DNA from: Iphione sp. A-MEVVRFRX5
Taxonomy: Eukaryota
NCBI GenBank assembly: GCA_976226885.1
Contig: OZ320321.1
Coordinates: forward strand, 22,506,001-22,570,000
Direction of reading: 5' to 3'
DNA: 64,000 bases
A program made the position numbers and the translations under genes. Below are positions 19,001 to 59,416 of the stretch, piece after piece; position 1 is the stretch's first letter; each line of letters opens with the position of its first letter. The notes under the pieces are model-generated. The model worked only from the letters and a program-made list of their open reading frames with translations. It had not been told where the DNA came from and ran no database searches.

Positions 19001-19629
19001 TCGCTTAGTCTCCCTCCCTATTACAGAAACTGTACAACAAGGGTCGAGACGTTCCACCAGTTAAATGCAACGCCAGGGGGGGAGGTTGGGGGTCGATATT
19101 GACTTGGGGGAGGTGCACTACTTACTTTTTACAGTTCCTGGCGAAGCGCACCAGGCTTGGCACCGTGATATGTTTGCAGAAGTTGAGCTTCAACACCTCC
19201 AGATTGGCGTGGCAGAAGCTGGCGAGCGTCGACACGCTGAGAGACAAAAGACACAACAGACATCAAGGTAGGCTTGGCTGCGGGGGGAAGGGGGGGTGTT
19301 AAGGGGAAGGCAGGTGTCAGAGAAGGGGTTAGGGTTCTTTTCCTTGCTGCGCACAGTAGAAGCATGCTTGTAACACTTGTCAGGGCCTCGAGTATTTAAC
19401 TAACTCCTTCACCCGTAGGTCTGTCTGCTTTCCCATCTCGCCGTCTCCCCTCTCATTCTCTATTATTCCCCTCATTCTCATTCATTCTCATTCTCCCTCG
19501 TTCTGTCTGTCCGTCTATCTGTCTCTCTCTTTCTCCTTCTCCCTCCCTCTTTCTCATTCTCTCTCATCCTTCATCTCTCCCTCTCTGATTCTCTCTCCCT
19601 CCATCTCATCCATTTCTCTCTCTCTCTCT

Positions 19630-19698
<69 letters not shown>

Positions 19699-43016: not shown

Positions 43017-43099
<83 letters not shown>

Positions 43100-43324
43100 C
43101 GCGCCCTCTTTCTTATTGATTCTCTTTCTCTTTGTGCTTCTCTTTGTGTTTCTTTCTCCCTCTCCTCGTCTCGAACTCGCATTCTCCCTCTCTGTTTCTG
43201 TTTTTGTCTGTCTGTCTCCCTTTCTTTCTTTCTTTGTCCTGCTGTCTCTTTTTCCCTCTCCTCATTTTCTCCCTTTCGCTCCTCTCTCCACTTCTCTGTC
43301 CGTCTGTCTCTGTCTGTCTGTCTC

Positions 43325-43399
<75 letters not shown>

Positions 43400-46300
43400 A
43401 ACACACACAGCACCCTGAGTGTTAGCAGGATTCATGCATAACCCCTCTCTCACACATACACACACAGCACCCTGAGTGTTAGCAGGATTCATGCATAACT
43501 CCTCGGCAGTTTGTTTTGTTTTCACGTCAAGCTGAAGTGGTTTAACTTTTCAAGCACTGGGAGTGTAGGAAAAATCACACGCAAATATTTAAAGATACCT
43601 TTCCACACGAAACAAAGCCTCTCGGTCGTTGTATGCGTACGAGTAGAACCGAGGAGATATTACTACCCATAATACATCAGATCGAATGAATAAGTGATCC
43701 TACTGGAAGTTATATGACTAGACACAGATCAACTGATGAATAAACAGGTACATCCGTGTATGACGCAATGCCATCTTTATTCATGGCAGGAAGCATACAC
43801 GCCACCGATGAATAAATCTCAATGGTATTTATTGCCAGCAAGAGCTACTCAATGTAATAATCACAGAGCACCGAGTCGAGGGACTCTGAGTAGCAGGCTT
43901 TTCTCTAAGACTCTGATGAGTTCTTGTTACGCCTGCTGTGGGTTTGTTCGCAGTCTATTTTTCAACTTCTGCCATCATGCTCACCTGCTGTAATAATGCT
44001 CGGGTTTCGGTTTGAATATTCAACGTCGAGCTCGGGGGCCACAAACCACTATGAAGTCCCAACCCCCAACCGAAGCCACTAGTTAAGGGGATACAGCTCG
44101 GTTTTGCCTCTAACCCCCAACCGAAACTAAATGAAATGTATTCGGGTAAATATATGTGCTTTTTGCTTAAAGAAAGATGTGCACCTGTGGATTGAAATTA
44201 TTTTGGGGACTGCTTACTAAGATTTCAATATTTTGACAAATCTACACTGCAATGTAGGATCGGGCGTAGTTTGCACAAATAAATCTAGCATATTTTAAAG
44301 AAAAAAAAACACGAATGGCCTTGTTAGAGGCAAAACCGAGCTGTATCCCCTTAAATATCAACCAATAGATAGAGACCGACAGACAGACAGCAGCCATACA
44401 GAGGAGGAACTGAGCTATATCTCCTATATTAACTAACCTAACCTTCGAAAAAAATAGATAAAGATAAACAAACATATACATATACAAAAACAATGTACAT
44501 ACATACATACATACATACATACAGGCAGACAGACAGACAGACAAAAGGGGAACCGAGCTATGTCCCTACATCAATTAACCTAACTTTACATAGACAGAAA
44601 GACAGACAGAAAAAAAGACAGACAGACAGACGAGGGACAGGGGGAGAACCCAGCAATAACTTCTCTATCACTTGACCTAAGCCTTAGATAGACAGGCGGA
44701 CAGATAGACAAAACAGATACAGGGAGACCTTGCTATAACCTGTATTGTGTGCCAAAGCGGCGGCCATTCGTGTAATTCTAGAACTGTGATACAATATTAC
44801 CTTTGTGGGAGCGGAAGAGGCAGACTTTTTCAAATCTATGCATGATATTATTATGGCATTACGCCTATTCTCCTGAGGTGTAGGATGAAGACTTATCTCA
44901 CCTTTGACCATGCTTAGAGACCAAATCGTGGACTGCTGCGTCGGTCACCACCTGACAGCCGTTCAGACAGACACTCTCCAGGCTGCAAACAGGAGCGGGG
45001 TACAGTTTGCTTTATCTATGTATATAGTACATATAACACAAATTATACAAATAAGATAAGAAGGAATCAACATGGAAGGGGAAATCATTATCATATCCAC
45101 AAGTAGAAATATGTAAACATACATGAATGGCCACTTACAGGAACAAATGATCCCTAAGAATATTTATCCTTACAAAGAAGTAGGTATTCGTATTTGCGAC
45201 ATCGTGTCAGTCGATGGAATGAGATATTCATTACTAAAACATATCTACAGTAGAAACCCTATTTGTGACAACCCCTTGGGTCCGACCAAAAGTGGTCACA
45301 AATTGATAATGGTATTCCTAAAGATCATTACTTTGGTGCCCACCTCATGTAGTCTTTAGAGTGAGAATGGTCGGAAATTGATGCAGTCACAAATAGGGAT
45401 TCTACTGTATGTTAAAACTGAATGCATATTCTATGAAGAAAATATTTTTGTGGAGGTAAATAGTCACTTGTTCACCTAGATGTCCTAATCCTATGAATAA
45501 GTTGTCCCCACAAACAGTGCACCAAATCCCTGTACGTGGACATCTCGCTATTAAAATATACAAATTCTATGGGCTGGTTTTATTATCTCAAAAAAATTTG
45601 TCAGATGTCAAACACACAATGAGTCGTTAAGCTTTCATGTTCTTTGACATCACCAACACTCCGTGTCCAGGGTCGTGCTCAAGCATCGCTTACACCTTAT
45701 CTTGTTGGCGCGCCATGACACCGTGTGAAACAAGTGGACTTTTAATGTTCAACAGATCTGATTACTTTTACAGCTGATACAGTGAAGAACTGCGAAGTAC
45801 ACAAAAGAGCACTTCTTGCGTAGGACAAACAAAATTTTTGTTCCGTACCGCTACATTACTCCACAAGTGGCATTACTTACAATTTGTATATCTATACACT
45901 GTACATACGTTGTATTACTTCATTAGCCCTTCAGGCTCAAAATTACATTATGAACACTTTTAATACAATGTCAAATCCCTTTTTGTTCTGTTTATTGCAT
46001 CGGAACAAGCCGAGATGTCCCGATACAGCATCATCAGGGGGGCGATCACCTCACAAGAGCAACCAAATTCCTCGACCCCCTCCTCCACCCCCATGGGCGT
46101 CCTAGCAACTGTATATCGCAAGAGGAGCGAAAGGGGGGGGGCGGGGGGTTGACAGAATGGAGGTTAACCCCAGCAGCTCCCCAGGTAGGCTCCCCCTTCC
46201 TCCTCACCTGTGGCTGCAGTCGACCAGCGCCATGACGCCGTTGTCGTTCACGTTGGACCAGGACGCGTCCAGGTGGGTAATGTGGCGACACCGTGCGGCG

Positions 46301-47657
46301 GCGTGCAGAAGTATATTGTCCCCGGTGAGCTCGCCACGTGAACAGCCGGTAAAGTTGAGCTCCTGGAAAAATACGGCGCCGCGCATGTTTAAAAGATGAG
46401 CGTGAGGTTTCAACACGGGAGGTGTACAAAAGTGTATGGAAAATATGAGATGGAGACAGAAAAGGGGGGGGGGGGGAGAAAAAAACAAAAGCGACGGAGA
46501 AGCGTGTGACAGAAAGATGTAGAAAGGGGATGCCCGCCGTGAGTAATACAGACACAGGCAGAGAGACAGTGATAGGTAAGGACAGGCCAAGAGATAGGTA
46601 TGTACGTATGTGTGAGAGAACGGGGATTTGCGTATGCTATATACATATACAATCATCACAGTATCATCTAGAAAGAAAGGAAAGTGGGGAGGGAGAGACA
46701 GACAAGAAGAGAGGGGAAGAGNNNNNNNNNNNNNNNNNNNNNNNNNNNNNNNNNNNNNNNNNNNNNNNNNNNNNNNNNNNNNNNNNNNNNNNNNNNNNNN
46801 NNNNNNNNNNNNNNNNNNNNNNNNNNNNNNNNNNNNNNNNNNNNNNNNNNNNNNNNNNNNNNNNNNNNNNNNNNNNNNNNNNNNNNCATGCAATGATACC
46901 TATGGTGAACAGGTTTTGCTTGCCACGCTCGTTGAAATCTTCTGGAACATTGTATCAAACCATGTGCACTCTTTGAATGTTAACTACACATAACGTCCAA
47001 ACACGCTCTTTCTTCTTTTCTGTATTGAACCAATCTTAACCCTACACCTGTGCAAATCATCTGCCGACCCCCATGCAGCTGAGTGGCTCGGGCGCCGACT
47101 CACCTTGAGTGACTCAGAGCACTGCCTGAAGAGCTCACGGAGGCCGTTGACGGACACCTGCTCACCATGACACTGGACCAAAGTCAGACTGGTCGGCTGA
47201 CGACGACCAATCTCGACCAGCCAGCTGTCAGCCATCTTACTGGTCTTCCTTACCGCGATGCTCCTCCCTGGGAACAAAACAGGACGTGTGAGAATCGTCT
47301 CAGTTCATGAGACCAGGCCAAAACACAAAAGCCAAACACAAGAAAATGAGAATCTTTTTTCCACTGAGGAATGGATGGATAGAAGAAACCCTCAAATAAG
47401 ACCAAGCTTGTTGGGACTGGCCAAGTTTGCTTTGCCACTCGATTTGATGTCCCTACAGGGTTGGCTATGTGATGCTTAGTTCGTGCAGTGTTGATTTCAA
47501 ATATAGGCTGGGCGTTAAATAAGATTAGTTGGTAGCCTTGGAGGGTTGGTTATGTAAGGCTTGGCTCTTGCAGTGCTGATTTCGAATATAATGTAATGAA
47601 GAGACAACCGCTTGATTGACCGTAATACCTTAGTCTGATACATAGAGTAAAACAAAA

Positions 47658-47742
<85 letters not shown>

Positions 47743-50700
47743 AGAGACTCATCGAGAGTAGTTCATAAGATACACTCCTATAACAGAGTGATAATCTTTC
47801 AGTTAACTCTAAAGATACGTGTTGTACAATTAAGAGATAATATGAACCCATCAGTGAAATATAATCCTGATTCTACGTAAGGGCTTGTCCACCAGTGTGA
47901 TCATAGTGAGATCCCTCCCACCCACCCAGCACTACCACCCCAACTCAGTCTGCTTCCTGATGTATTAAAATTTAAATTTGTATACACTGTATACACCACA
48001 CAGAGACTAATCGAGAAGCTTACTGTAAGATACATTTTTACACAATGGACTAATCATATCCTTCACTTAACTGCAAAGATAAACCTGTTCAAACATATAC
48101 TTTACATATACTCACACAGAGACTCACAAAGAGTTGCTCACAAAATACATTCATGTTACAGACTAAATCATCTTTCTGTTAAAGATAAAGATACATCTAT
48201 TCAAACATATGTACTGTATATATACACTCACAGAGAGACTTACAAAAAAAACTACATGTAATCACAAAGATCATTGCACACATATGAGTAACATAACAAT
48301 CCTTCAGTTAACTTGAATATATGTTGTTGTTTTTTTTTTAAGAAAGCAAATACAGCAGTGTATACACTCACAGAGCGACTCGTCCAGAGCTACCCGGTGC
48401 AGCTGCATGCACGTCTGAGCTAGTCGCCCCAAGTCACGCTGGCGCAGGTAGCTACAGATGTGCAGCCAGATTTCATCGGGAAGGCACAGCCAGGCCGAAA
48501 ACTCGCCAGCTGCTATACGTGGGCTCTGATAGAAGAAAGCGGAGTACATGGGAGAAGGGAATGGCATTGGGAGGCAGCTAGATAGAGGAGGTCGGCGGGG
48601 AAGAAGGAGGAGGAGGACATAAAACACATTACTGCTGCGGTCTCCGAAAAGAAAAGAAAAAAGAACTTGTAGTAGTTATATGTACATGGGAATAAAATGG
48701 AAAACAGTTCCCAGGTGTTCTTCAATACTTCTGAGGAGACAGAGATCTTTCTTCGTAATAATATCAGCTGTTACCTGCTCCTTCGTTCGTGAAGCTAAAG
48801 CTGATTGATTCTTAGTAAAAATTAACCTTCAATCTTATATCTATACCAAACACACAACGGTTATGACTAGTAAGGAACACATGTTGTACTTAACATATTC
48901 AGGCAAAGTACAAGTGTATCCGCCAGTTCTATTTGGAAATCTAATTTACGGATAATGTATTTACAACAGTACTATGGGGTCTTGGATAGTCTACGGACGT
49001 TACCCTCAACGTTTACAGGGGAAAATGATAAATTCGGACTTAGCTACCAACATATGGGACCAGCCATGAAAAAAGGGTTACCAAAAATTTGGATTACAAT
49101 GTCAAATAAACACTTAAAAACATTTAAAGGGTGGAAGAGTATGACAATTCCGTGATGAAAACCTGTTTTGTTATTTTTCATGGAGAAGCCGGGGCAAAAG
49201 TTTTGGCCATTTTTAATCAGTAATCAAGAACTGAAATCTGTTTAAAAATATCAATTTTTAAGAACTAAGTCTGTCCAATAATTAAGATTCAAGATTCTTT
49301 TTATTTCAAGACTTTTTTTTACTTTTTTCACAGCACCATAATGTTTTGCATTATAGAACAACCTAGAATTAATTTAGCAATCCTCTCGATCTTTTAAGTA
49401 CGTTGCTGTAACAACATTGGGCTGGGATATCTCAGGATTTGGGAAGAGTATTTGCATTCTGTTTACATGATGCCTAAACATGTTCTGTAGTTGTGCACCC
49501 TTTTTGCCTGTCTGGTCACATATACATCATGGAATGAAGTATGATGTATTATCATAATCTTCCTTAATATTTTCGTTCAAAACCTCTGCTTCTGGTAAGT
49601 GGATCTAGAATAAATGGATATTTATAAATAGTGACTATTTTGAAATCGCGAACATAACAAGCACAATGCCAACCAAGCTTGAGTTTAGTATACCCGTCTC
49701 AAAGTAAAAAAAAAAACTCTTACTTGACTAACATTGTGTTCTGTGTACAAATATAACAACCTTACAAAAGGGAATGAAATCCGAAAGGTGAATGCAAACA
49801 AATGGTCATTGATGTTAACTGGAACCCCACACACGAAAAAAACAATCGTTAGAAAGGATTCCCGACCGCAAATGTTTCGGTAAATAGTGGAGTAACATTT
49901 GACGCGCCATGAGTGCGACAGCCACAGGTGGTTAGAAGTCGAGTGCAGACAAGAAGGAAAGATGCGACACACTCTTGTTGAGCAGGTCAGAACACAGCGG
50001 TTAGGTCTTTTTGTTCAAATCAGATTCTAGGATAGTGTGCCATACGAATCTATGAACGACTTCGTCATGGCGAATGGAAATTATTCAACAAGTAGAAACT
50101 AGTACTTATGATGCACTGAGAGTGAATGAGAGGACAACAGTTCCGAAACGACCATATACCTTCCCTGGAGGAGGCCTTGGAGACTAAAGAAACAAATGCA
50201 AATATGTACACATCTTCCTTTTAGTGCAGGATTCCACGCAATCGTTTTCTTTTTTTTGTCGCTTCTAGGTATGCACAATAATATGATGCTACGAAAATCC
50301 AATGAAAAAGCCCCAGCAGCACGCAAGTTTTTATTTTTGCTCTCAAAACAGATGACTAATCACTACTCTCAACAATTTGAGCCTAAGTGTTTACTACATT
50401 TATATTTACAACTAAAAATATTTATCAGCATATGAGTACAATATCAAGCAGTGTTTCAGTTCCGATAAAATTTGTCTAATAGAAATTAGTTCTTTTAAAA
50501 CAGAATCTGATCCTAAAATTCAAAGGTGTAAATAAAGTAGTTATAAAGTTGTTACTGCTCAAATCTTTGGTAGTGAGCTGTATCGAGTGTGAATTTCAGC
50601 CAATCGTTTGGTTAGCGATGATGAGCAGCGGGAACCTTGAAATACGCACAAAAAATAATCATCCTTAACTTGTATGGTCACTCGAACCCTTTATGTTTAC

Positions 50701-53700
50701 CTACCATTTCGAAATACTTGGTGTAGGTGTTCATGAGACTCGATTTTAGTGCCTTGGAAGCTGGTCCTATGAACAATAATAAAAGTAGAAAGAAAAATGA
50801 AAACATGAATAACAATTAGGCTGAATAGAAAAAAAATCAATGATACCTGTTGAGAAATGTTAAGTTGCAATTTAAATGCATGTTCAGAGACATTTTTTCG
50901 TTTGAAAATGGTCATCTCAAAACATTTTGGAAGATCAAACTGGCGCTTTCTCAGGAAATTCCATGATAAAACACTAGGTGTCGCCATGTTCGAGTATATC
51001 TTAGGAGGCGCCACTTTCGCATGTCACCTACAGGCTTCAGTAAATGTATCATGTAAAGCTCCTGTGGTAGAGACCTACCAGAGGAGTAGACGGCTGATTT
51101 GACGGTCATTATCTTAGGCCGCTGGCTATGGTCTGTTACATCATACATAGAACAGACATTTCCAGGCAAACTTGCTGCCGCGCTCGAAACTCGGTTCCTG
51201 TTATAATACAAAATAATGGGAAATATACTTTTATATATACGAACCTGTGTACATGTACTTACATCTACATGCGCAGTCCAGATTTGATACCCAAATAACT
51301 CAAGTAGCATGAAATACAATTCAAAAATCGATTTTTTTTCAGCTATTCAATCTTTTTGGGTTAGCATTTTAGGTCTACAACTAAAGCTAAAATGCTCCAA
51401 TTAGTAGCAGCAAACACCTTTCGGAAATCGTGTATTTTCGGATACTGGGTATCCGGATAACGAATCTTGAATGTATACAAATATATGAGTTCTTGTAATC
51501 CCTTATGATATAGGGTATGAGGGTACTATATAGGGTACTATTCCATAGTACAATATCAACGAACTGGCAGTTCACTATTAATATGTCTGTATGTCGGTAG
51601 CGGTTTCGGCAAGAAACAGGACTACACTTTGGAAGTAATTCCATATGCATGTCCATGTATCTTATTTTGATGGGTGCATGGGGGAATGGGGTCCAAGAGT
51701 TTCTGTTGTTTTAACGCCTGCTTCCGGACACTCACGGATGGGGCGATTCCCCGGGCAAGTTCGATATCTGTCCTTCCCTCTCTCTTCCCCTCTGTCTGTC
51801 TCTTATACATGTTCAGACACGATGGAATTCATTCCAATTCTGTGTAATTGGAGGTTTTTCTACAGATTTCTTTTCGAAATCTAGCCAAACCTGTGTTTCC
51901 TGGAGACATGCAAGGCATAGGCCTAAGAGAGGTGTATATGAGAAATCCAAAGTAAATATCACAGAAAGGGGACTGAATAATTAGTGGGTTTTTTTTGTTT
52001 TTCAAGAGAGTCTTGGGAAAAAGAGAAAGACATTTTCCAAATCTGACATAACTTTATGTGGTCTCTTCTGACGCATGCAGCACTTTTAGTGATAATTTGG
52101 GACTTCATACTATGTTTCAAGGACCCATACATAGATTGTAGAGTGAAAAGATGCAAGACGCAAGGGAAAAAAACAGATGCATGTACTACGGCTCAACTGG
52201 AGCCATGTAAGATAGGTAAAGGATCGGGTGGAATACTGGAGCCATGTGTCATGGGTAAAGCTCAGATAGAGTACGTGAACTCACCTAGGGCCATGAGCAG
52301 CAGTCGACAGTCCTGGTTTCCTGCTACTCTCCTTTGGCTGCATATCTCCAGCTACGCCCCCAGCACTTCCACCCTCTACGCCACCATTTTGAGCGGCGGC
52401 GGCGGCGGCGGCGGCGGCAACACCGGAGTCGCCGTCGCCACCTGCGTGACCGGCACCTTCGTCGGTGTCCGTCCGTCGCTCCGCTACTCCCGCCAACCCG
52501 ACGCTACGCCTAGTGGCGCTCATCGGCCGCTTCGTCGACCGGGAGACGGCACTGGTGGGGCGTTCTCCGCCAGGGGGCGTCACATTGAGACTGGAGCGGG
52601 CCCGCACCTCGCCGTGACTCAGCGCCGACCACGCCATCGTCGAAGACCGCGCCCACCTCCGCTTATAACCGCTGTTCTCGAGGGAGCCGCGGACGTTACG
52701 AGTAGCGCTCTTTGCAGACTGTGGCCGACGTTTTCCGGCCGACGGCCCGCCCGACTTCCGGGGCTGCCCCGCCGACTGTGCGGGCTGTAAGGCCGACTGG
52801 GGTCGGGCGGGCTGACCCGGTTTGAAGCGTGGGTCTGACATGAAGCGCTTGACGAACTGTTGGTAGACGATCCTCTCCTGCTGATCAACAACCCCTTCCC
52901 CCTCCCCCTCCTCCACCTCCCCGTCCTCCCCCAGGTCTTCCCCTACCTCATCTCCCCCCAGATCGACGGGCACATCATCAGCATCGTCACTGAAGGAGTT
53001 GTTACTGGCCGCTTCCTCCACACGCTGCACCTGCCTATCCCGAAAGGCAGCATGACCTTCACCAGCCTGTGGTAAGCTCTTCTTCACCCCCGACGACGAC
53101 GACGCCCCCGCCAAGGCCGCACCTCCGAGCCTGACGCCCGCCTCGTGGTAATGATTGAGGACGGACGCCCCGGGCACCTTGAAGGACGCCGTGGTTTGGC
53201 TTCCGTCCAGGCTCAGGTTGAGATTGAGTTCCTCTTGAAGTGCCGCCGGCAGCAGCTTCTTGGGACTCTCCGCCTCGTTGTACTCGAACTGGATGTCCTC
53301 CGACAGCTTGGCCAGGTCCAGACCCACACCCCCCGGCGGCTGCTGAGTCTTGGGGCTGCTGTTCTCGGCCCGCGCGTCGAGATCCAGCGACAGCTCCGTC
53401 TGGAGGGACTTGGGCAAAGCGCGGACGGGACTCTCCTCCTTCTCGTACTCGAAGTCGTCGCTGTCCCTGACGCCACCTCCTCCTCCTCCCCCTCCTCCTT
53501 CCTGTTTCAGGTTAAGCACCTCCCGGTTTTGCGAGCTCCTACCCGCCTCTCCTTGCCCGGGGCCCTGGGCGGTCGTCTGTGACTGCTGCAGCCACGACGC
53601 CAAGCTCCCCGCCGCCCCCCGCGAGTTATAGTTCATCGACTCCTCCAGGCGGCTCTTGAAGTTGGCCGCCGACTGCGACAGGGTGAACGATCCCCGGCTG

Positions 53701-56700
53701 GAGCCGAGCTGTCGCGCCGTGTCTCTCTTCGCCTTGAACGGTACGGGGATGACGCCGCTCAGCACGGCGCCACACTCCACGCACCACGTCACGTACGTCT
53801 TGTTCACCTCGGCGCATTCCGGGCATACTTTGACCACCGAGGCGCCCGATCTCTGTACGGAATCAGAGGGCGTATCGGTCGCTGTGGCCTCCGCGCCGGC
53901 CTTTAGAGTGCTACTGAACGTTGGCTCCTCGGAGACTTTCGCAACTGTTCGACTTGGGTGCGCATCTTTGACAGTCTGATTGTTCCTAGGGGACATTTCG
54001 AAAAGCATCTCGACTTCCTCCTCGTTGCTCCGTCGCTGTGCGTCACGGACAGTCTTTGCGTCCTCTCGAGTGGCACCTCCCTCACTATTGCTGCTGCCGT
54101 TGTGGTTCTTCCTGGGTTGCTGCCGCCGGCGGGAACTTTCCTCGCTGGAATGGTGACTGAGAACCTCCATCTCCGCGGAGTCGTCCGACTGCCCGCGAGG
54201 CTGGCCGTCCGGTCTCTTCTTCAGGAACTCAAAGTCAATACCCAGAGCCTGGAGTCGCGCCGTCATGCCTTCATCGTCGACCACCGAGGTGACCTTAGTG
54301 AAGAGGTCGTCGTCGTCGCTGTCCTCTGCGTTGAGCATCTCGTTCAGGATCTTTCTCTTGTCGTTATCCAGTTTGAACCGGTCCCACTGCGCTCGCTGTG
54401 ACTGGGACAGCTCATCCTTTCCCGTATACACCCCAGAGGCTGAGCTTTTCCTCGTATCCTTCTCCATCTGCTCTACTCTCACCTGCCGACCTTCCGGTGG
54501 GCCACCGATCGCAGCGTTATTTAATTTCGCCTCGGGTTCTTTGAGGTGCTTCAAGGCAACCTGCTCACTGAGCGACTCGCCTGCAGTCGAGCTACTACAC
54601 CGCGCCGGTGCCCCCGTCACCCTCAGTCCTGCGTCTGCACGGTCCTTGTCCTTTCTCGGAGTTTCGATGATCTCCGGCTCGGGGATGGGCTCGAAGCCGT
54701 GGGCCGCGTCCGCACTGAGCTGCTCCATGGAGGCGAAGTAACGCTCGATGGACGCCGTGGTGTAGGGCATACCGGCCTTGATCTTGTCTTCAAACTGCTG
54801 CAGTCTACATGCAACAAAAAACCCTTCACATTAAGGCATATTTTAAAAAATATATATATCTGTGTTTCAGGTAACCCGACCGACTCTGATTTTTGTACCA
54901 ACTGATCTTTTTTTATTTTTCAATATTTTGTGAATATCTCTAGAAAGGATAATACTACAGATGCATGTAATGCATCATTTTGTTCATGGCATCATTAGCT
55001 TTCATATGATGTAAGTTTCATGAAGATCAGAGCAGTAGAAGTAAGTGTCACGACTGTTAAGTATTCTCCAGCTTTTTCACTGGAACATTTCTCTGGTGGA
55101 AAAAAAAATATATATCCACTGACTGACCGACCCTATACTTTTTCAACATGTCACTAGAAACACAGATATATTTAAAGGCCTAAATACAGGAACACTTCTC
55201 TTCATGAAAGATAACAAAGCTCCTTTAGGAGAAAGATTCTTAGATATTTCCAGACTTTGTAGCCTGAGGTAACTTTCTTTTGATATTTTCTTAAACATGA
55301 AATAAAAGGAAAGGGAAATGCAGAGACATATAAATGTCATCAAATTTAAGGTCAAAATCCATAAAAAGTTATGCTGGAATGATGGGTTCCTGATATCGAA
55401 GTTTCCCACAACGAGGTGATTTCCAGGTACATATCCACTTCATAAACAAAGACACAGATGTACCCTAATGACTGCTTTTGTCAAAATTACATAAAAGTGG
55501 ACAGCGTGAATCTCGTACCTGTAGGTAAAGATCAGTTCCTCTAAAGTCAAAGTACGGACTGCGATTCTCTTATTGTTTTGTTAATGCTATGAGTTATTTG
55601 AATCGAAATATTATAGATTGCCACTACTTTGCTCATATACAAACTGCCTTCACTAGTTTCCAGTCCAATGGTAATAAAATGACACATCATAGCTAAGAGT
55701 TATAATGTCTTGCTCCCAGTAAATCAGATCATAGGAGTGAATTTAGATCGTTTCTGACAGTACCAATCAATCATTTTTTTGGCCTAGTAAACATATATAT
55801 ACATGATCAACGGACTCCTTTTCAGTATGATCTGTTAAAAAGATTAGTAGAAAGTGGTTTCAAGCCACAAAAATCCCCCTTCATTATATAGATAATATAT
55901 CATGTAAACCTTTCAGGAGTGCACCCACCTGATATCGGCTACGTGCTGTCGAATACCTTCAATATGTTCTTCCTGGCTATTGGACGGTGGCCACACATGA
56001 CCTTTGACCTCACTTCCAGATCCGGAGCGCCTATGGCCCACTTTAGCCGACCTCGGCCGACCTGCGGGGTGGACGACTTCCGTCGCCCGGCTGTCGTCGA
56101 AGGGGGCGGAAGCCTGGCCGGCGCGCCCGACGCCGCGGGGGCTCTCGATCGTCGATTGGCGCGAGAGCTTGGCTGTGTTCATGGAGGTCTCACTGACGGC
56201 CGTGCTGTCTGTCACTGTCACCGTCTTGTAGAACTCCTTCTTGGTGCCGCCGATCCCGCGCACGTAGTCGAACTTGCTGGATCGCCCCGCCGCGCCGTCG
56301 GCATCGTCGACGCCGCCGGACGCGACGCGCCCGTCCTTGACAAAGTCCGACAGACTGGTGGCGACCCTCTCAGCCTGCTGCTGAGCGGCGTGGGCGGGAC
56401 TCGGGGGTCGGTCGTTCTGGCCCTGGAAGCTGTGTTTAGAAACCGTCACGTTCGCGTTGTCGCCCTCTGCCGACGTCGTCGACAACTTCCGGGCGCGGGC
56501 ATATATCTCGTCGCTGGAGTACGAGCACTTGGTGCTGCGTCGCGCCGAGGACGTCGTCGACTCACATCGCAGTTCCGTCTTCTCGCCTGCTGCTAGTTCA
56601 CTGGTTTTCTCCTTGCGTTGCCCGGAGGTCTCTCCAACCATCGACGGCTGCTCGAGGGTGCTCGGCCGGTGCGTTTGCAGCCCCAGCTCCTCTATGCTTG

Positions 56701-59416
56701 CCCGCTGAGCGGCGAACGGGAAGGCCATGGCCATCGTGGGCTGACTGTTGTTCACTTCAGTTTCCGATCGGAAGGAGTCAATGCTCATGTCGTCCTTTGG
56801 TACGCCCACCGCTCGCCATGGCGGGCGATCCTCACTTCCGCCGACGCCCGAAGCGCTGCGCTCCTCCTCCACCCAGGCGCTCTCCTCCAGGTTCTTCAGC
56901 AGTCTCTCCAGGCGGTCCTTCCCCAGGATCGACTGCAGCGTGCCTGACGCGAACTGCTCTTGGATGCTCGACGGCTGTGTCGAACCGTACCGCGCGGCAG
57001 ACGCGTCCCCATCGTCGTCGTGAGAAGCGCTACCTGCGCGGTGAGCGCGGTTCCGTTCGACGAAGTCCGTACTCTCTCCCGGAGTGGGTTTCCCGGCAAA
57101 CAACAGCTTGGGTAAGCGTGGCTCCCCCTCTACTCGCAGCGCCGGAGGAACTCCATCGACCTTGTCCGGGATGGAGACTCTCTCCTCCTCCGCTTCGCTC
57201 TCGGTTTCGATTTTCACCGGACGTGGCGGCGCGTCGCTCGTCGTCGTCGACCGCGATAAGCCTTCATGCGTCGCCGAGCGGCGCATACCCATCGACTGAT
57301 TTCCCGTCATGCTGCCGGAAGTGACTTCTGACCGTCGATGGAGTTCTTCCTGGTGACCGGCCAACTCAAATGACGCACTTCCGGCGACGTTATGCTCGCT
57401 CTGACTGGCCCGCATGCCGCTAGGGGCACCAGCGGCAGGTTTATTAGCGCGTGTCTTCGGCCGGTGCGACGGAGTGAACGTCGGGGCGGTGTAGCCGCGT
57501 ATCTTCTCAAATCCGCCGCGATCGACCGACAGCCCCAGAGCCGAGTAATCGTCCTCAAAGTCGGCATCAATCACGCTGCGCCGCGGCATCGTCGAGGAGC
57601 TCGCGTCGGGCCGCTTCTCGTCTAGCACCGACGACCAAAAGGCGTCCGTATCACCATCGTCGCTGTTGTTGTCGCTGTGCCCGCCTCTTCCTCCTCCACC
57701 ACCGCCGTTATCGAACGACTCCCGACTGACCGACGGCGATGAGTTCGTGACCTTCTTGCTCTTGACACCACCTTTCCCCTTCCGACTTCCGGTGCTCTTC
57801 TTTGTCGCTCTAGCGCCGCCGCCGCCGCCGACGCGCGAGGTGTTCGACGCGACGATGTTCAGCTCGCCGGGTGACAGGTCGGGTAGGGAGAAGCCCAGTC
57901 GACCGGAACTTGTCGACGGCGACGTGCGTCGCTGCGCGCTGGAGTCCCTTGAATGCGCGGCTGTCGAGGTCGGCACCGTTCCAATATGGCTGCCGCTCGG
58001 CTCCAAATCCCCCCTCCCGATACCATTAAATACGGCTGGCCTCGATCCAAGCTTATATCCGGCACCACTCTTCGGACCGACGACGTTCCGTCCGACCAAC
58101 GCCGCTTCCGGCCCCAGCAGCGCGGGGCCGCCGACCCCAAGCACCGGACTGCTGATCCCAATGGAATCCAGCGGCGGGGGCGACGCGTTCCCGTACAAAC
58201 CCGTCGGCCGCAGTTGAGAATCACGACCCCTAGTGGCGGAACCAGCAGTCACTGGTCGCTGATTTGTCGACGATCGTCTCGTCTCGTTATCTACGGCGAC
58301 GACACGAGAGTCTGCCAACATCTTGGAGCGAACATCCGGTTCCGTCGGAATGCGGTTGCCATTGTCGTCGGTACTCCCTCCAGTGGTATTGTCCGGAGAG
58401 CTGTTGGTGAAAAAGAAAGAATTCACAAATTATAAAATATATGTAGAATTACAGCACACATATACAAATACATATGCAATAGAGAGATTTCCGTCCATAA
58501 CCAAAGGTACGATAGTGCAAATGTTTATTGTAATGCTCTCATCATTGGAAAGTTGTACAGCATAAGAACCCTGCATCCCGCACCAACAAAAAATTAAAAA
58601 AAGAAGTATACAGATCATACCTAGAGTCTGTGTTTCCCTGTGAAACAGTGTCGAAATACTGTATGCGCTTTCGACGAAGTTCCTTGAGATTGCGGGTCCG
58701 GGGTGTGTCCTCGGGTCGCGGTGAGAAGCCTGATGGGGGTCTCACGTCGTACTTACCCTACAAACAAGGAAACAGAAGCTGTCAGGTCCCCTATCCGAGG
58801 TGGCAAGCACAGAGTCACACCTGTGAGAGGTCATCTTGTGGTTGATTGTACCTCTGCTACCCAGAACACTAAGATCTTTTTTTTTTGTAGAAAGCCTCTG
58901 GTCGGGACACACTGTTCTCTTTCTCAAACTGTCCCTTCCTGAGGCTACCCAGCAGCCGAAAACTATCTTTTTTTATTTGTACATCTCCTTGAATGACACA
59001 AAAGTAAGGCAGTAACAGTCGTCCATATCGTGGAACATATTTAAAAATCTGAGCATTTGATACAACGCCACAAAGTATAATGTAAACTTATACAGAGAGT
59101 AGTACACATGAATTTGTACGGGTAAGCATTTTTGGTGGATTTAACAAATGGGATTTGAAATGTGGCAACACTGACAAAAAAAACATGTTTGGAAAATCTA
59201 GTGAATGGACAGTCCTAGGGGGAAAAACGACGACATAGAGATAGATGGATCCATTCATCCATCCATGCATCGATGTATCCATCCATATGGTTTTCATTTT
59301 TTGGAATGTGTTCAAGTCATGAAATAAAAAGAAGTAGCTAGATGAGGCGTCTATAGCAAAATGTCCATTTAACTTTTACTTACAGTGGAACTAGCTGTTT
59401 TGCAAAGACAGAGCAT
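10001..59416 (-). CDS. Multi-exon gene model: F-box/LRR (FBXL-type) protein with a very long low-complexity N-terminus and a C4 zinc ribbon; ~2,118 aa; two alternative last exons
   Basis: Manual exon chain: 59416-59384, 58757-58621, 58400-55929, 54804-52285, 51197-51079, (50183-50160), (48794-48775), 48525-48372, 47267-47104, 46362-46208, 38138-38027, 23506-23379, 20228-20112, 19236-19126, then 13277-13187 or 10091-10001. All introns are GT-AG and phase-compatible; total 6357 nt. The F-box-to-stop part is well supported; the start exon and the two microexons are tentative. Confidence 0.75.
12630..12954. mobile_element. Non-autonomous TIR element (Harbinger-like), inverted copy of the 54835-55180 family
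   Basis: Ends taggtctttaaaaatctgtgtttccggtaac and gttactggaaagagaaatatttttaataggcctta match the two ends of the 54.8-55.2 kb copy in reverse; shared internal tgaaactta.atcatat.aaagc. Confidence 0.6.
13187..13277 (-). CDS. Alternative last coding exon A (KLSQLYLYGVDGLRNVDQVQAVKSDLWLQM*)
   Basis: Acceptor ttgttgtgaccttgtAG, phase 2; 91 nt to TAG; ungapped paralogue of 10001-10091. Confidence 0.8.
13645..13995. mobile_element. piggyBac-like MITE
   Basis: TTAA at 13641-13644 and 13996-13999; termini ccctttaagggc / gccttcaatggg (CCY-type imperfect TIR); three 32-33-bp subterminal repeats with the palindrome aatgccatatggcatt. Confidence 0.7.
14286..14386 (-). pseudogene. Degenerate third copy of the terminal exon (pseudo-exon)
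   Basis: tttgctctgcAT|G TTG ATC CAC CTG TAT TTC TAT ... GCA AAG GCT CAC CTC TGG ATC GAG ATA gives LIHLYFY ... AKAHLWIEI. The acceptor AG reads AT, the middle is 2 nt short, and the first frame hits TGA. Confidence 0.7.
15424..15710. mobile_element. MITE with CAGG termini and 5-bp TSD (copy 1)
   Basis: TIR caggcccgtagccagg / cttggctacgggcctg (15/16 match); accag duplicated at 15419-15423 and 15711-15715; internal agagaggtggaactcctggtt repeats. Confidence 0.85.
16540..16852. mobile_element. PIF/Harbinger-type MITE
   Basis: Perfect 17-bp TIR ggggctattcacatgta / tacatgtgaatagcccc; TAA TSD on both sides. Confidence 0.85.
18006..18161. repeat. Imperfect tandem duplication, ~82-bp period x2
   Basis: gttatttc.gtaa.tgtcaca...ctgaccca..gc.ctaaaccttt occurs twice. 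Confidence 0.6.
19126..19236 (-). CDS. LRR exon (SVSTLASFCHANLEVLKLNFCKHITVPSLVRFARNCK)
   Basis: LEVLKLNFCxxIT pattern; acceptor cttttgtctctcAG, donor AA|GTAAGT; phase 2 to 2. Confidence 0.92.
19440..19830. repeat. (TC)n / pyrimidine-rich simple repeat with an internal ~70-bp duplication
   Basis: Directly visible. Confidence 0.9.
20112..20228 (-). CDS. LRR exon (RSLDLCGCKGITDMGVRAIAMACHSLEYLDVSSSMITHK)
   Basis: LDLxGCxxITDxGV pattern; acceptor ttttctgtctccAG, donor AG|GTAAGG; phase 2 to 2. Absent from the ORF track because it is short. Confidence 0.93.
20963..21078. repeat. Compound trinucleotide microsatellite (TTG/TTC/CTC/TTA)
   Basis: Directly visible. Confidence 0.9.
21478..21628. other. 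Assembly gap (151 N); further gaps at 22368-22498, 32123-32261 and 46722-46886
   Basis: Runs of N. All lie in introns whose flanking exons join in frame without extra sequence. Confidence 1.
21629..22260. repeat. Purine-rich (GGA/GAA-type) low-complexity tract
   Basis: Strongly A/G-biased + strand between two assembly gaps. Confidence 0.85.
22667..22762. repeat. Three imperfect copies of ctcggttctgc.t.ac.gagca
   Basis: Directly visible. Confidence 0.75.
22773..23046 (+). mobile_element. Dispersed repeat family with a 3' GC hairpin (Helitron/Helentron-type non-autonomous element inferred); further copies at ~18511-18750, ~30839-30990 and a 3' fragment at ~26517-26590
   Basis: Shared core gtatgt.tgt.ggtgtg...ttcacctt.aaaatactt.gattactaccaaaattacccagtgccatgg; 3' hairpin tgtccccc...gggggaca at 23011-23042. 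Confidence 0.55.
23379..23506 (-). CDS. LRR exon (IKDTTIHHLMHHCKKLQSLSVANCPNLTDVALTEIATYCSGIR)
   Basis: LxxLxVxxCxxLTDxAL pattern; acceptor catttcttacAG, donor AG|GTATGT; phase 0 to 2. Confidence 0.93.
23570..23635 (-). pseudogene. Partial tandem duplicate of the 5' part of exon 23379-23506 with an intact acceptor (VKAIIIHSLMHHCKTYSLPAL*)
   Basis: 33/42 nt identical to the first 14 codons of the real exon; acceptor atgtttgctacAG; in-frame TGA at 23572-23570. Confidence 0.75.
23700..24170. mobile_element. Possible foldback-type element with tgcattgtg / cacaatgca subterminal repeats and an A-rich centre
   Basis: gtgcattgtgg on the left and ccacaatgcac on the right in inverted orientation; ends and TSD not resolved. 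Confidence 0.35.
31037..31760 (-). mobile_element. Penelope-like retroelement 3' fragment (GIY-YIG endonuclease), frameshifted
   Basis: Translated pieces ALRRPK/NLREHLVRARV, CTNKECRYC, NSNLIYCMTCKQCNSQYVGQTK, DRFREH, ISDHFN, IHRLRTHISQGLN match PLE C-terminal motifs; spread over several frames. Confidence 0.9.
32894..33070. mobile_element. Tc1/mariner-like MITE (family shared with 40579-40758)
   Basis: ta|cagt ... cactg|ta ends; internal gatgactttata and gacaatt.ccatatatcc.acaaa.tcta..ggaaccaaaa shared with the second copy. Confidence 0.65.
35338..35570. repeat. Degenerate minisatellite with an aattcacacttcctgg core (~6 copies)
   Basis: Core recurs at irregular ~35-50-bp spacing. Confidence 0.7.
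38027..38138 (-). CDS. LRR exon (SLRTLELFGCFNVSPRSAASIASHCKFLTILNLGQCWK)
   Basis: Cys-containing LRR pattern; acceptor ttttttttacAG, donor AAG|GTCAGT; phase 2 to 0. Confidence 0.92.
38665..38775. repeat. Minisatellite, 31-bp unit x ~3.5
   Basis: Unit atagcagtctcacatcactccacttggctga. Confidence 0.9.
39085..39275. repeat. Minisatellite, ~74-bp unit x ~2.6
   Basis: Repeated gtaagtgag..gc.a.ttcatgcttgactacacttgcacag. Confidence 0.85.
40579..40758. mobile_element. Tc1/mariner-like MITE (second copy)
   Basis: TA flanks, cagtg...cgctg ends, internal homology to 32894-33070. Confidence 0.65.
43015..43500. repeat. (CT)n/(CA)n microsatellite block plus a duplicated cacagcaccctgagtgttagcaggattcatgcataac
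   Basis: Directly visible. Confidence 0.9.
44330..44740. repeat. Composite array: ~35-bp core separated by (GACA)n/(TACA)n tracts
   Basis: About five copies of g.aaccgagctat.tc.ct....a.t.aacctaac. Confidence 0.6.
45248..45407. mobile_element. Tc1/mariner (pogo/Tigger-like) MITE
   Basis: TIR cagtagaaaccctatttgtgac / gtcacaaatagggattctactg (1 mismatch); TA TSD. Confidence 0.85.
46208..46362 (-). CDS. LRR exon (ELNFTGCSRGELTGDNILLHAAARCRHITHLDASWSNVNDNGVMALVDCSH)
   Basis: LxxLxLxxC / VxDxG LRR pattern; acceptor tatttttccAG, donor AG|GTGAGG; phase 0 to 2. Confidence 0.9.
47104..47267 (-). CDS. Post-F-box/LRR exon (WRSIAVRKTSKMADSWLVEIGRRQPTSLTLVQCHGEQVSVNGLRELFRQCSESLK)
   Basis: Acceptor gttttgttcccAG, donor AAG|GTGAGT; phase 1 to 0. 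Confidence 0.88.
47662..47738. repeat. (TA)n(GA)n microsatellite
   Basis: Directly visible. Confidence 0.95.
48372..48525 (-). CDS. F-box exon (SPRIAAGEFSAWLCLPDEIWLHICSYLRQRDLGRLAQTCMQLHRVALDESL)
   Basis: Matches the F-box consensus LPDEI..I.SYL...DL..LAQTC..L..VA.D..LW, with the W completed by the next exon. Strong pyrimidine tract + CAG acceptor; donor T|GTGAGT. A phase-2 acceptor near 48579 is also possible. Confidence 0.92.
48775..48794 (-). CDS. Candidate 20-nt microexon (ASRTKEQ) converting phase 1 to phase 0
   Basis: Acceptor cagctttAG, donor CAG|GTAACA; supplies the phase change needed between 51079 and the strong acceptor at 48525. Confidence 0.4.
50160..50183 (-). CDS. Candidate 24-nt symmetric microexon (VSKASSRE)
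   Basis: Acceptor ttgtttctttAG, donor AG|GTATAT; phase 1 to 1, so inclusion is optional for the frame. Confidence 0.35.
51079..51197 (-). CDS. Linker exon RNRVSSAAASLPGNVCSMYDVTDHSQRPKIMTVKSAVYSS
   Basis: Acceptor ttgtattataacAG (phase 2, matching the donor at 52285), donor G|GTAGGT (phase 1); open reading frame. Confidence 0.6.
52285..54804 (-). CDS. Giant coding exon (2520 nt, ~840 aa), low complexity, with a CxxC-x10-CxxC zinc ribbon
   Basis: Contains the 829-aa ORF 52281-54770 and extends upstream (RLQQFEDKIKAGMPY); acceptor ttttttgttgcatgtAG, donor AG|GTGAGT; phase 2 to 2; motif CPECAEVNKTYVTWCVECG at 53825-53772. Confidence 0.9.
54835..55180. mobile_element. Harbinger-like non-autonomous element
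   Basis: TAA on both flanks; imperfect long TIR (ggc...atatctgtgtttc); ccgaccga motifs; related to 12630-12954. Confidence 0.65.
55929..58400 (-). CDS. Giant coding exon (2472 nt, ~824 aa), Ser/Gly/Arg-rich and probably disordered
   Basis: Lies within the 837-aa ORF 55913-58426; GC-rich; acceptor ttctttttcaccaacAG, donor AG|GTGGGT; phase 2 to 2. Confidence 0.9.
58621..58757 (-). CDS. Coding exon GKYDVRPPSGFSPRPEDTPRTRNLKELRRKRIQYFDTVSQGNTDS
   Basis: Acceptor ttccttgtttgtAG, donor AG|GTATGA; phase 0 to 2; joins in frame to the exon starting at 58400. Confidence 0.8.

What the first reader, a model, noticed from the sequence alone, without database searches (positions are those of the whole stretch)
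48372..59416. F-box/LRR module apparently fused to a ~1,750-aa disordered, zinc-ribbon-bearing N-terminus
Seen: the exon at 54804-52285 has no stop before a strong GTGAGT donor, so the large ORF must continue downstream. The next recognisable domain exon is the F-box, reachable in frame either through the linker exons or directly via a phase-2 acceptor near 48579. Known: typical FBXL proteins carry the F-box near the N-terminus and are a few hundred residues long, though some (e.g. FBXL17, FBXL13) have extensions. Inference: an unusually large SCF receptor whose disordered region may localise or scaffold the ligase. I cannot assign an orthologue.
Basis: partly seen in the sequence, partly recalled or inferred. 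Interest (0 to 1): 0.7.

Follow-up and report, generated by a model that had tools for sequence, protein, structure and literature searches.

The report
Giant zinc-ribbon F-box/LRR ligase receptor
The two giant exons and the F-box/LRR exons are one minus-strand gene for a protein of about 2,180 residues, a likely ubiquitin-ligase substrate receptor with a long floppy zinc-ribbon-bearing front end; unnamed and, as far as I could find, unstudied orthologues are already annotated from worms and molluscs to sharks, frogs and marsupials.

Summary
Exon B (54804-52285) is open throughout. Its only in-frame stop lies inside the AG|GTGAGT donor. The same split-Arg AG|GT site ends the homologous exon in three related genomes, and in one of them no stop follows. 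Two small exons bridge exon B to the F-box exon (48525-48372) in frame: X (51197-51079) and a linker (50766-50705). Their phases are conserved in all four genomes. Sixteen exons with canonical splice sites give an open frame of 2,177/2,178 aa.

A profile of exon B alone found annotated proteins of 1,100-2,200 aa in nemerteans, brachiopod, annelids, molluscs, hemichordate, amphioxus and vertebrates. Nineteen of the 22 scanned carry a C-terminal F-box, most with detectable LRRs. All named ones are "uncharacterized" or "hypothetical". Two unbroken public contigs, probably cDNA, span ribbon or exon-B tail through F-box and LRR.

A second, short F-box-only isoform remains possible. No RNA run was listed for this species. 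This is a new member of a known but unstudied FBXL subfamily.

The parts
59384..59416 (-). Tentative first coding exon (ATG at 59416, ACT|GTAAGT phase-0 donor)
Evidence: Read from the sequence; it fits the phase-0 acceptor of the next exon. No conservation with L001-L003 was found.
58621..58757 (-). Exon 2: conserved N-terminal family motif (DTPRTRNLKELRRKRIQYF)
   Evidence: tblastn hits to L001 and L002 and to residues about 7-34 of the Owenia, Tubulanus and Lingula proteins. N-termini of 17 homologues are listed. Acceptor tag|GGT is phase 0; donor TCT AG|GTATGA is phase 2.
55929..58400 (-). Giant exon A (about 824 codons, low-complexity, several conserved short motifs)
   Evidence: ORF; splice sites; alignment A3 with three genomes, whose last motif EEHIEGIRQHVADIR is conserved in three and recognisable in the fourth.
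52285..54804 (-). Giant exon B (840 codons), with the zinc ribbon and a twice-repeated acidic motif
   Evidence: AlphaFold2 gives mean pLDDT 43, with 612 of 840 residues below 50.
53772..53825 (-). Zinc-ribbon core C-x2-C-x3-N-x6-C-x2-C, with Trp before the third Cys
   Evidence: The four Cys and the Asn are invariant in 40 aligned family members. The pattern occurs in 73 retrieved proteins. Pfam DZR scores 19.4 bits, below its 27.3 cut-off.
51079..51197 (-). Exon X (119 nt; phase-2 acceptor, phase-1 donor CTG|GTAGGT)
   Evidence: It is the best-supported of four open AG...GT candidates with the required phases in the interval. An equivalent exon exists in L001, L002 and L003. It shares the motif (L/M)(T/S)V-x-SA with L002, L003 and two annelid proteins.
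50705..50766 (-). Linker exon (...SSLMNTYTKYFEM; phase-1 acceptor, phase-0 donor ATG|GTAGGT)
   Evidence: Conserved in L001, L002 and L003. The annotated homologues listed read Y-x-(K/R)-Y-x-x-M directly followed by (S/T)PR.
48372..48525 (-). F-box exon (SPRIAAGEFSAWLCLPDEIW...DESL; phase-0 acceptor cag|AGC, phase-1 donor)
   Evidence: Pfam F-box-like 4.1e-11, 42.9 bits. The acceptor is at the same place in L003. The closest solved F-box is SKP2, weakly.
47104..47267 (-). LRR exon L1
   Evidence: Splice-aware fit to guide P0092.
46208..46362 (-). LRR exon L2
   Evidence: LRR_6 at 20.7 bits on this exon alone.
44902..44982 (-). LRR exon L3
38027..38138 (-). LRR exon L4
27311..27388 (-). LRR exon L5
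23379..23506 (-). LRR exon L6
20112..20228 (-). LRR exon L7
   Evidence: LRR_6 at 22.0 bits.
19126..19236 (-). LRR exon L8
13187..13277 (-). Last coding exon, copy a (gives 2,177 aa; the low coordinate is approximate)
10004..10094 (-). Last coding exon, copy b (gives 2,178 aa; coordinates approximate)

Best explanation
This is one minus-strand gene of at least 16 coding exons, spanning about 49 kb (59.4 kb to 10-13 kb). It encodes a protein of about 2,180 residues with these parts in order. First comes a short conserved N-terminal motif. Then comes about 1,780 residues of mostly disordered Ser/Gly/Ala/Arg/Glu-rich sequence, carried by two giant exons and studded with short conserved motifs and one C4 zinc ribbon. 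Two small bridging exons follow, then an F-box, then a C-terminal solenoid of roughly a dozen cysteine-type leucine-rich repeats. Most likely mechanism (inferred): the F-box docks on SKP1 of an SCF (SKP1-CUL1-RBX1) ubiquitin ligase, and the LRR solenoid binds the substrate. The zinc ribbon and the linear motifs of the long arm would recruit partners, place the ligase, or regulate it. The gene structure and family membership are shown here. The ligase function is inferred from homology and fold. The role of the N-terminal arm is conjecture.
For: (1) The homologous exon ends at a split Arg codon AG|GT in the window, L001, L002 and L003. In L002 no stop follows and the frame runs 47 junk codons on, so a splice donor explains the conservation better than a stop.
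(2) Exon X and the linker exon have the required phases (2 to 1, then 1 to 0) in all four genomes and join the phase-0 F-box acceptor.
(3) The 16-exon model uses only AG/GT sites and is open for 2,177/2,178 codons.
(4) A profile of exon B alone gave 80 hits. Nineteen of the 22 long ones scanned have an F-box 300-700 residues downstream of the ribbon, most with detectable LRRs. They come from nemerteans, brachiopod, annelids, molluscs, a hemichordate, amphioxus and vertebrates.
(5) Four such proteins align collinearly to the window; three of them also match exon 2 with residues 7-34, and all four run from the zinc ribbon to LRR exon L8.
(6) Contig L004 (3,654 nt, run SRR3401917) has one unbroken ORF from ribbon to LRR end. 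P0092 (2,066-nt contig) runs from the exon-B tail through the X motif, the linker and the F-box to the C-terminus.
(7) Compact relatives of 595-677 aa still pair the ribbon with the F-box/LRR.
(8) An AlphaFold2 model of a homologue's F-box/LRR domain, 50-75% identical to the window per LRR exon (pLDDT 88.7), matches FBXL2 at TM 0.80/0.84 and FBXL17 at 0.71/0.78. By sequence, the Owenia homologue's domain hits FBXL2 at 1.9e-36.
Against: No RNA run was listed for this species, so no splice junction is observed directly here. The start codon is not fixed: exon 2 has no Met in the window, and the proposed first exon is not conserved. Exon X is only weakly conserved. Whether the public gene models and Logan contigs rest on RNA could not be checked. 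SCF assembly, substrate and zinc binding are untested. The window's LRR exons are individually below Pfam cut-offs. The fold evidence comes from a homologue, because the joined window model was neither searched nor folded.
Confidence: 0.85

Rival explanations
1. There are two isoforms. Besides the long fused protein, an internal promoter between exon B and the linker exon yields a short F-box/LRR-only protein that starts at the Met inside the linker exon (...SSL-M-NTYTKYFEM). This adds to the best explanation rather than replacing it.
For: NCBI predicts a 414-aa 'isoform X2' in amphioxus that starts at the equivalent Met (MMNYHLDNQTYAKILTM-TPR...), alongside a long amphioxus form of 1,344 aa that has the zinc ribbon. 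The window and L001 keep a Met at that place.
Against: L003 has no Met there, and conservation runs upstream of it. The amphioxus short form is a computed model whose RNA support could not be checked. No promoter evidence was obtained here.
Confidence: 0.3
2. There are two separate neighbouring genes. The giant-exon gene ends at the TGA at 52283-52281, and the F-box/LRR gene has its own promoter and first exon downstream.
For: The ORF does end at a TGA. The Ptychodera flava annotation splits the locus into a 1,429-aa model without an F-box and a 270-aa LRR model.
Against: L002 has no stop at this site but keeps the GT. The linker exon is coding upstream of any Met and needs an upstream exon in phase 1. 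In L003 only about 400 bp separate the last exon-B-like exon from the linker exon, and most of that is exon X. Nineteen of 22 long homologues scanned are fused. The Ptychodera pair lacks the F-box exon altogether, which looks like an annotation gap; the other hemichordate is fused.
Confidence: 0.05
3. Exon B splices directly to the phase-2 acceptor at 48577, skipping exon X and the linker exon, as the main or a minor isoform.
For: The join is in frame and has a long pyrimidine tract.
Against: It would remove the Y-x-K-Y-x-x-M motif that precedes (S/T)PRI in the ten homologues listed. The stretch 48577-48526 matches homologues only as a chance alignment of pyrimidine-rich codons. The conserved acceptor is cag|AGC at 48525.
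Confidence: 0.07

Closest known systems
Unnamed 'uncharacterized protein LOC...' family: Lingula XP_013397233, Lineus XP_064634992, Owenia CAH1787023, Lamellibrachia KAI0220530, Callorhinchus XP_042202810, Xenopus laevis LOC108705424, Monodelphis LOC103101858
   Same: Among the invertebrate members, the order of parts is the same: N-terminal motif, long low-complexity region, one zinc ribbon with identical Cys/Asn/Trp spacing, the Y-x-K-Y-x-x-M/(S/T)PRI motif, F-box, then about 12 LRRs. Four of these proteins are collinear with the window's exons.
   Different: The window's predicted protein (about 2,180 aa) is at the long end of the range; vertebrate members are about 1,200-1,450 aa and compact forms 595-677 aa. 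The disordered parts are only 30-47% identical even to the nearest genomes. For the vertebrate members only the ribbon, F-box and LRR were checked, not the N-terminal or pre-F-box motifs. No member has a tested function.
FBXL2 / FBXL20 (human SCF substrate receptors; PDB 6o60)
   Same: An F-box followed by a cysteine-type LRR solenoid. This is the best sequence match (1.9e-36) and the best fold match (TM 0.80/0.84) among solved structures.
   Different: Only 26% identity in the fold alignment. FBXL2 is about 420 aa with the F-box near its N-terminus (recalled, not tested here), and it has no zinc ribbon or long arm. Vertebrate FBXL2/3/13/14/20 score far below family members (1e-37 or weaker against 1e-78 or better), so this is a separate subfamily.
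FBXL17 and SKP2
   Same: F-box/LRR receptors. NCBI names the amphioxus short isoform 'SKP2-like'.
   Different: Both are weaker matches than FBXL2 (6e-22 and 8e-18; TM 0.71 and 0.39). Neither has a zinc ribbon. Nothing here supports orthology to SKP2.
DZR / Zn_ribbon-type zinc ribbons (Pfam PF12773, PF13248; DZANK1, RadD, eL40)
   Same: A CPxC ... aromatic-CxxCG pattern with 10 residues between the two knuckles. Thirty-one of 40 family ribbons hit DZR at E of 0.01 or better. The profile weakly hits the RadD, DZANK1 and eL40 ribbons in the PDB (E 0.002-0.008).
   Different: There is a single ribbon, not a double one. The window's copy is below the curated cut-off. The spacing also equals that of RanBP2/NZF fingers (recalled), but only 2 of 40 members hit that Pfam model, and the Trp sits before the third Cys rather than before the first.

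Membership tests
FBXL (F-box + LRR) SCF substrate receptors | An F-box domain above the curated threshold | tested here: met
   PF12937 at 42.9 bits (cut-off 24.3) and PF00646 at 30.7 bits (cut-off 20.5) on window 48304-48627.
FBXL (F-box + LRR) SCF substrate receptors | A leucine-rich-repeat solenoid directly C-terminal to the F-box | tested here: met
   Nine LRR exons are collinear with homologues whose LRR_6/LRR_4 hits pass cut-offs. Single window exons reach only 20.7-22.0 bits of LRR_6 against 23.4. An AlphaFold2 model of a homologue, 50-75% identical per LRR exon, matches FBXL2 at TM 0.80. The joined window model itself was not scanned.
FBXL (F-box + LRR) SCF substrate receptors | Binds SKP1 and assembles with CUL1-RBX1 | not testable with these tools
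   Inferred from the F-box only.
Unnamed zinc-ribbon FBXL family (Lingula LOC106164026-like) | Zinc ribbon C-x2-C-x3-N-x6-C-x2-C with Trp before the third Cys and G after the fourth | tested here: met
   Window 53825-53772. C, C, N, C, C are invariant, and P, W, G are at least 90% conserved, in 40 members. The pattern occurs in 73 retrieved proteins.
Unnamed zinc-ribbon FBXL family (Lingula LOC106164026-like) | Motif Y-x-(K/R)-Y-x-x-M followed at once by (S/T)PRI...W-L-x-LP(D/E)E | tested here: met
   It is encoded across the linker/F-box exon junction (50705|48525) and is present in nine of the ten named homologues checked, with Littorina a diverged variant.
Unnamed zinc-ribbon FBXL family (Lingula LOC106164026-like) | N-terminal motif (D)TPRT-x-x-(L/I)K-x-(L/I)R-x-KR(L/I)-x-(Y/F)F within the first ~40 residues | tested here: met
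   Window exon 2 (58757-58621) aligns to residues 7-34 of the Owenia, Tubulanus and Lingula proteins. The N-termini of lophotrochozoan members share it; the hemichordate and amphioxus models do not.
Pfam DZR (PF12773) double zinc ribbon | Score above the gathering threshold | tested here: not met
   19.4 bits against 27.3 for the window's ribbon. There is only one ribbon. It works like a zinc ribbon but is not filed as DZR.
RanBP2/NZF zinc finger (PF00641) | Match to the family model (the family's W-x-C start and, for ubiquitin binding, its T-F motif are recalled features, not tested) | tested here: not met
   Only 2 of 40 members hit PF00641 at E of 0.01 or better. The window reads V-K-V-C-P-E-C-A-E-V-N. 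The identical spacing is a lead only.
SKP2 orthologue | SKP2 as the closest characterised relative | tested here: not met
   Among solved chains FBXL2 scores above FBXL17, which scores above SKP2, by sequence and by fold.

The most novel reading that the evidence does not exclude
This would be an ancient bilaterian FBXL subfamily, kept from annelids to marsupials but without a named human, mouse, fly or nematode orthologue. In it a single zinc ribbon is obligatorily coupled to the F-box/LRR module, even in compact members of 600 aa. The ribbon would read a second ligand such as ubiquitin, a nucleic acid or a partner protein, and the long arm would scaffold a condensate or a large complex, giving a two-handed SCF receptor of a kind not yet described.
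Probability: 0.15. Interest if true: 0.6.

Novelty: new member of a known kind. Interest (0 to 1): 0.35.

Why it matters
For genome annotation, the result shows that the two giant GC-rich exons and the F-box/LRR exons scattered over 40 kb belong together, and it fixes the bridging exons. An ORF-based or naive gene caller would split them. For biology, it points to an F-box/LRR receptor subfamily that public databases hold in dozens of animal species under 'uncharacterized LOC' names. It seems never to have been studied, probably because human, mouse, fly and worm lack a recognised copy. The family is testable in Xenopus, axolotl, amphioxus or a mollusc or annelid model. The window's gene itself is an ordinary member of that family.

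Tried and rejected
RNA evidence: the look-up of sequencing runs on 48300-58299 listed no run.

Direct B-to-48577 splice: rejected as the main route.

First exon: blastn of the upstream 5 kb against L001-L003 found nothing conserved, so the ATG at 59416 stays a guess.

Pfam on the giant exons: nothing for exon A, and only sub-threshold zinc-ribbon hits for exon B.

Pfam on exon 2 and the linker exon: nothing.

Single LRR exons against the PDB and Pfam: too short to name a paralogue.

Literature: a full-text search for F-box + zinc ribbon + LRR, and a search for six LOC identifiers of family members, found nothing relevant.

Earlier notes by words: nothing.

Exons were searched one by one by reference. 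Exons were joined only inside my own scripts, to count codons, check the frame, compute composition and fit splice junctions. The fold of the F-box/LRR part therefore comes from a stored homologue (P0092:205-614).

The N runs were left untouched.
Full report
**What is in the sequence**

The region lies in AT-rich DNA (about 40% GC). It holds two islands of 61-64% GC that coincide with two minus-strand ORFs of 837 and 829 aa.

Exon A (58400-55929) starts after ...caacag| and ends ATC AG|GTGGGT. Exon B (54804-52285) starts after ...catgtag| and ends CCT AG|GTGAGT. Both junctions are phase 2, so A joins B in frame.

The stop that closes ORF B (TGA, 52283-52281) is made of bases 2-4 of the donor. 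Any phase-2 GTRAGT donor gives such a stop when left unspliced, so the stop by itself says nothing.

The F-box is real. Window 48304-48627 scores 42.9 bits on Pfam F-box-like against a cut-off of 24.3.

**Is the end of exon B a donor or a stop?**

A word search with exon B found three ORF-type proteins. Their contigs gave loci L001, L002 and L003.

All three loci carry, on one strand and in the same order, homologues of a small upstream exon, exon A, exon B, a short piece at window 50773-50702, the F-box exon and the LRR exons. L003 is compact: its whole F-box/LRR part fits in 2.8 kb.

The homologous exon ends in every genome at a split Arg codon followed by GT:
- window: AG|GTGAGT
- L001: AG|GTAATT
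- L002: AG|GTCTGT
- L003: AG|GTAATC

In L002 no stop follows, and the frame runs on for 47 AT-rich junk codons. A conserved GT without a conserved stop is what a splice donor predicts.

**The bridge to the F-box**

The conserved piece at about 50.7 kb is an exon, 50766-50705 (catag|GA ... GAA ATG|GTAGGT). Its acceptor is phase 1 and its donor phase 0. It encodes ...SSLMNTYTKYFEM.

The F-box exon starts at a phase-0 acceptor, cag|AGC, at 48525. L003 has the same acceptor.

The linker's phase-1 acceptor cannot take exon B's phase-2 donor, so one more exon is needed. In L003 it is obvious: an open exon at 12914-13035 with a phase-2 acceptor and a phase-1 donor sits between the two.

A scan for open AG...GT intervals with those phases found four candidates in the window. 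The one at 51197-51079 has the better donor and matches an equivalent exon in each other genome. These exons share a weak motif, (L/M)(T/S)V-x-SA, with each other and with annotated annelid proteins.

I fitted the LRR exons to the closest transcript-like homologue. That gave a 16-exon model that uses only AG/GT sites. It is open for 2,177 codons, or 2,178 with the alternative last exon noted earlier by this scan (note s1-347233).

The joining was done only inside my own scripts, to count codons, check the frame, compute composition and fit junctions.

**Do homologues share the architecture?**

A profile of exon B alone (alignment A1) was run against 1.84 billion representatives and gave 80 hits. 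I scanned 22 of the long ones with Pfam. Nineteen have an F-box 300-700 residues downstream of the match, most with detectable LRRs. The three without are:
- Ptychodera, a split model
- Lymnaea, 1,171 aa
- an unnamed ENA ORF

The sources are:
- nemerteans: Lineus, Tubulanus
- brachiopod: Lingula
- annelids: Owenia, Lamellibrachia
- gastropods and bivalves scanned: Littorina, Lottia, Potamilus, Argopecten, Mytilus, Solemya (further long hits from Biomphalaria, Haliotis, Gigantopelta, Patella and Pinctada were named but not scanned)
- hemichordate: Glandiceps
- amphioxus
- vertebrates: elephant shark, coelacanth, caecilian

A further search from the shark protein showed the family in:
- sharks and rays
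- sturgeon, gar, bichir and bowfin
- a few teleosts
- many frogs including Xenopus, and axolotl
- turtles, alligator and lizards
- marsupials
- two placental mammals

Every member that carries a name is called 'uncharacterized' or 'hypothetical'. No human, mouse, zebrafish, fly or nematode entry appeared in either list. I treat this as an absence of evidence, not a demonstrated loss.

Four annotated proteins align collinearly to the window. Residues 7-34 of three of them match exon 2, and all four then run through the ribbon, the tail of exon B and the F-box to LRR exon L8.

The ten named proteins listed read Y-x-(K/R)-Y-x-x-M immediately before (S/T)PRI...WLxLP(D/E)E, with Littorina a diverged variant. 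In the window this sequence is encoded exactly across the linker/F-box exon junction.

This settles the route. The apparent homology of 48577-48526 is pyrimidine-tract codons aligning by chance.

**Transcript-like evidence from relatives**

Two Logan contigs carry single unbroken ORFs across what are many exons in the genomes:
- L004 is 3,654 nt from run SRR3401917 and encodes the 1,112-aa protein P0033, which runs from the ribbon at residue 91 through the F-box at 730 to the C-terminus.
- P0092 is 614 aa on a 2,066-nt contig. It runs from the exon-B tail through the X motif...DPYAWYIAM|SPRI..., the F-box and all the LRRs.

They are most simply spliced cDNA. I could not check the library type of either run.

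**The parts of the protein**

N-terminal arm. The roughly 1,780 residues before the F-box have 20% W/F/Y/I/L/V/M/C, against 39% in the C-terminal domain. They are rich in S, G, A, R and E.

AlphaFold2 on exon B, with only four sequences, gave a mean pLDDT of 43, and 612 of 840 residues were below 50. Short confident helices sit at the conserved motifs. This fits disorder, but the shallow alignment weakens the inference.

Conserved islands in exon A include LGFSLPDLSP, DFEDDYSxLGLSVDR, a KDRLERLLKNLEESAW helix and EEHIEGIRQHVADIR at the exon's end. In exon B they include MPYTTASIERYFASME and an acidic motif present twice.

Zinc ribbon. The core (53825-53772) reads C-x2-C-x3-N-x6-C-x2-C, with Trp before the third Cys. 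The Cys and Asn are invariant in 40 aligned members, and the pattern is found in 73 retrieved proteins. Pfam places it nearest DZR/Zn_ribbon models, below their cut-offs. The profile weakly hits the RadD, DZANK1 and eL40 ribbons. Compact family members of 595-677 aa keep just the ribbon plus the F-box/LRR. This suggests the ribbon, and not the long arm, is the constant partner of the ligase module.

F-box/LRR. An AlphaFold2 model of P0092:205-614, which is 50-75% identical to the window per LRR exon, has pLDDT 88.7. It shows an F-box helical bundle and roughly a dozen strand-helix repeats. Its best structural matches are FBXL2 (TM 0.80/0.84) and FBXL17. By sequence, the Owenia homologue's domain hits FBXL2 at 1.9e-36, ahead of FBXL17 and SKP2. 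Named vertebrate FBXLs score far below family members, so this is its own FBXL subfamily.

**How it most likely works**

Shown here: one gene, the order of its domains, and its family membership.

Inferred from the established behaviour of F-box/LRR proteins: the F-box binds SKP1, the LRR solenoid presents a substrate to CUL1-RBX1, and the protein acts as an SCF substrate receptor.

Conjecture: the ribbon and the linear motifs of the arm recruit partners or place the ligase.

**Rivals**

Two separate genes is unlikely (0.05). L002 has no stop at the site. The linker exon is coding upstream of any Met. L003 leaves only about 400 bp between the two parts, most of it exon X. Fusion holds in 19 of 22 scanned homologues.

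The split Ptychodera models lack the F-box exon in both halves, while the other hemichordate is fused. That looks like an annotation gap.

An additional short isoform from an internal promoter cannot be excluded (0.3). NCBI predicts a 414-aa amphioxus isoform that starts at the Met equivalent to the one in the window's linker exon.

**Open points**

- No RNA run was listed for this species.
- The start codon is not fixed. Exon 2 has no Met in the window or L001, whereas in L002 it begins with ATG.
- The organism was not determined here. The closest transcript-like LRR match is nearly identical, over the stretch compared, to the protein of the annelid Lamellibrachia.

**Verdict**

The gene is a new member of a known, widely annotated but unnamed and apparently unstudied FBXL subfamily. 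Two literature searches found nothing on it.

Noticed in passing
loci and proteins (P0139-P0195): The family is widespread in vertebrates: sharks, rays, sturgeon, gar, bichir, bowfin, a few teleosts, many frogs including Xenopus, axolotl, turtles, alligator, lizards, marsupials, and two placentals (Tamandua, Condylura). Almost all are 'uncharacterized' or 'hypothetical'. No human, mouse, zebrafish, fly or nematode entry appeared, which suggests repeated loss.
   Followed up: partly
P0094 (677 aa), P0096 (595 aa): These compact family members have the zinc ribbon within the first 40 residues, about 250 residues of linker, and then the F-box/LRR. The ribbon and the ligase module stay together even when the long arm is absent.
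   Followed up: partly
P0093 and P0038 (amphioxus): A predicted 414-aa 'SKP2-like isoform X2' starts at the Met of the linker-equivalent exon, while a 1,344-aa form has ribbon, F-box and LRR. This hints at an internal promoter.
   Followed up: partly
window about 53470-53355 and about 53300-53190, minus strand: An acidic motif occurs twice in tandem in exon B (...DSDDFEYE..ESP.R.LPK.LQ.ELSLDL and ...EDIQFEYNEAESPKKLLPAALQEELNLNLSLD). Both copies are conserved in L001, L002 and L003.
   Followed up: partly
L002 about 6719 versus window 58757: Exon 2 begins with ATG right after the acceptor in L002. It begins with GGT in the window and GTG in L001. So the start codon sits in different exons in close relatives, or the first exon is non-coding in L002.
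   Followed up: partly
window 31040-31656, minus strand (intron between LRR exons L4 and L5): Broken ORF pieces contain a ...YCMTCKQCNSQYVGQTK... / ...RFREH... pattern that reminded me of a GIY-YIG nuclease, as in Penelope-like retroelements. Pfam gave no supporting hit, so this is an impression only.
   Followed up: partly
window 46722-46886, 32123-32261, 22368-22498, 21478-21628: There are four runs of N. All fall in introns of this gene.
   Followed up: no
window 42880-43525 and 19557-19743: Long (GA)n/(CA)n-type microsatellites in introns produce spurious Arg/Glu-rich ORFs on the gene strand.
   Followed up: no
P0042 and P0097 (Ptychodera flava): RefSeq splits the hemichordate locus into a 1,429-aa model without an F-box and a 270-aa LRR model that starts just after the F-box. 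The F-box exon seems to be missing from both, which looks like an annotation or assembly gap.
   Followed up: partly
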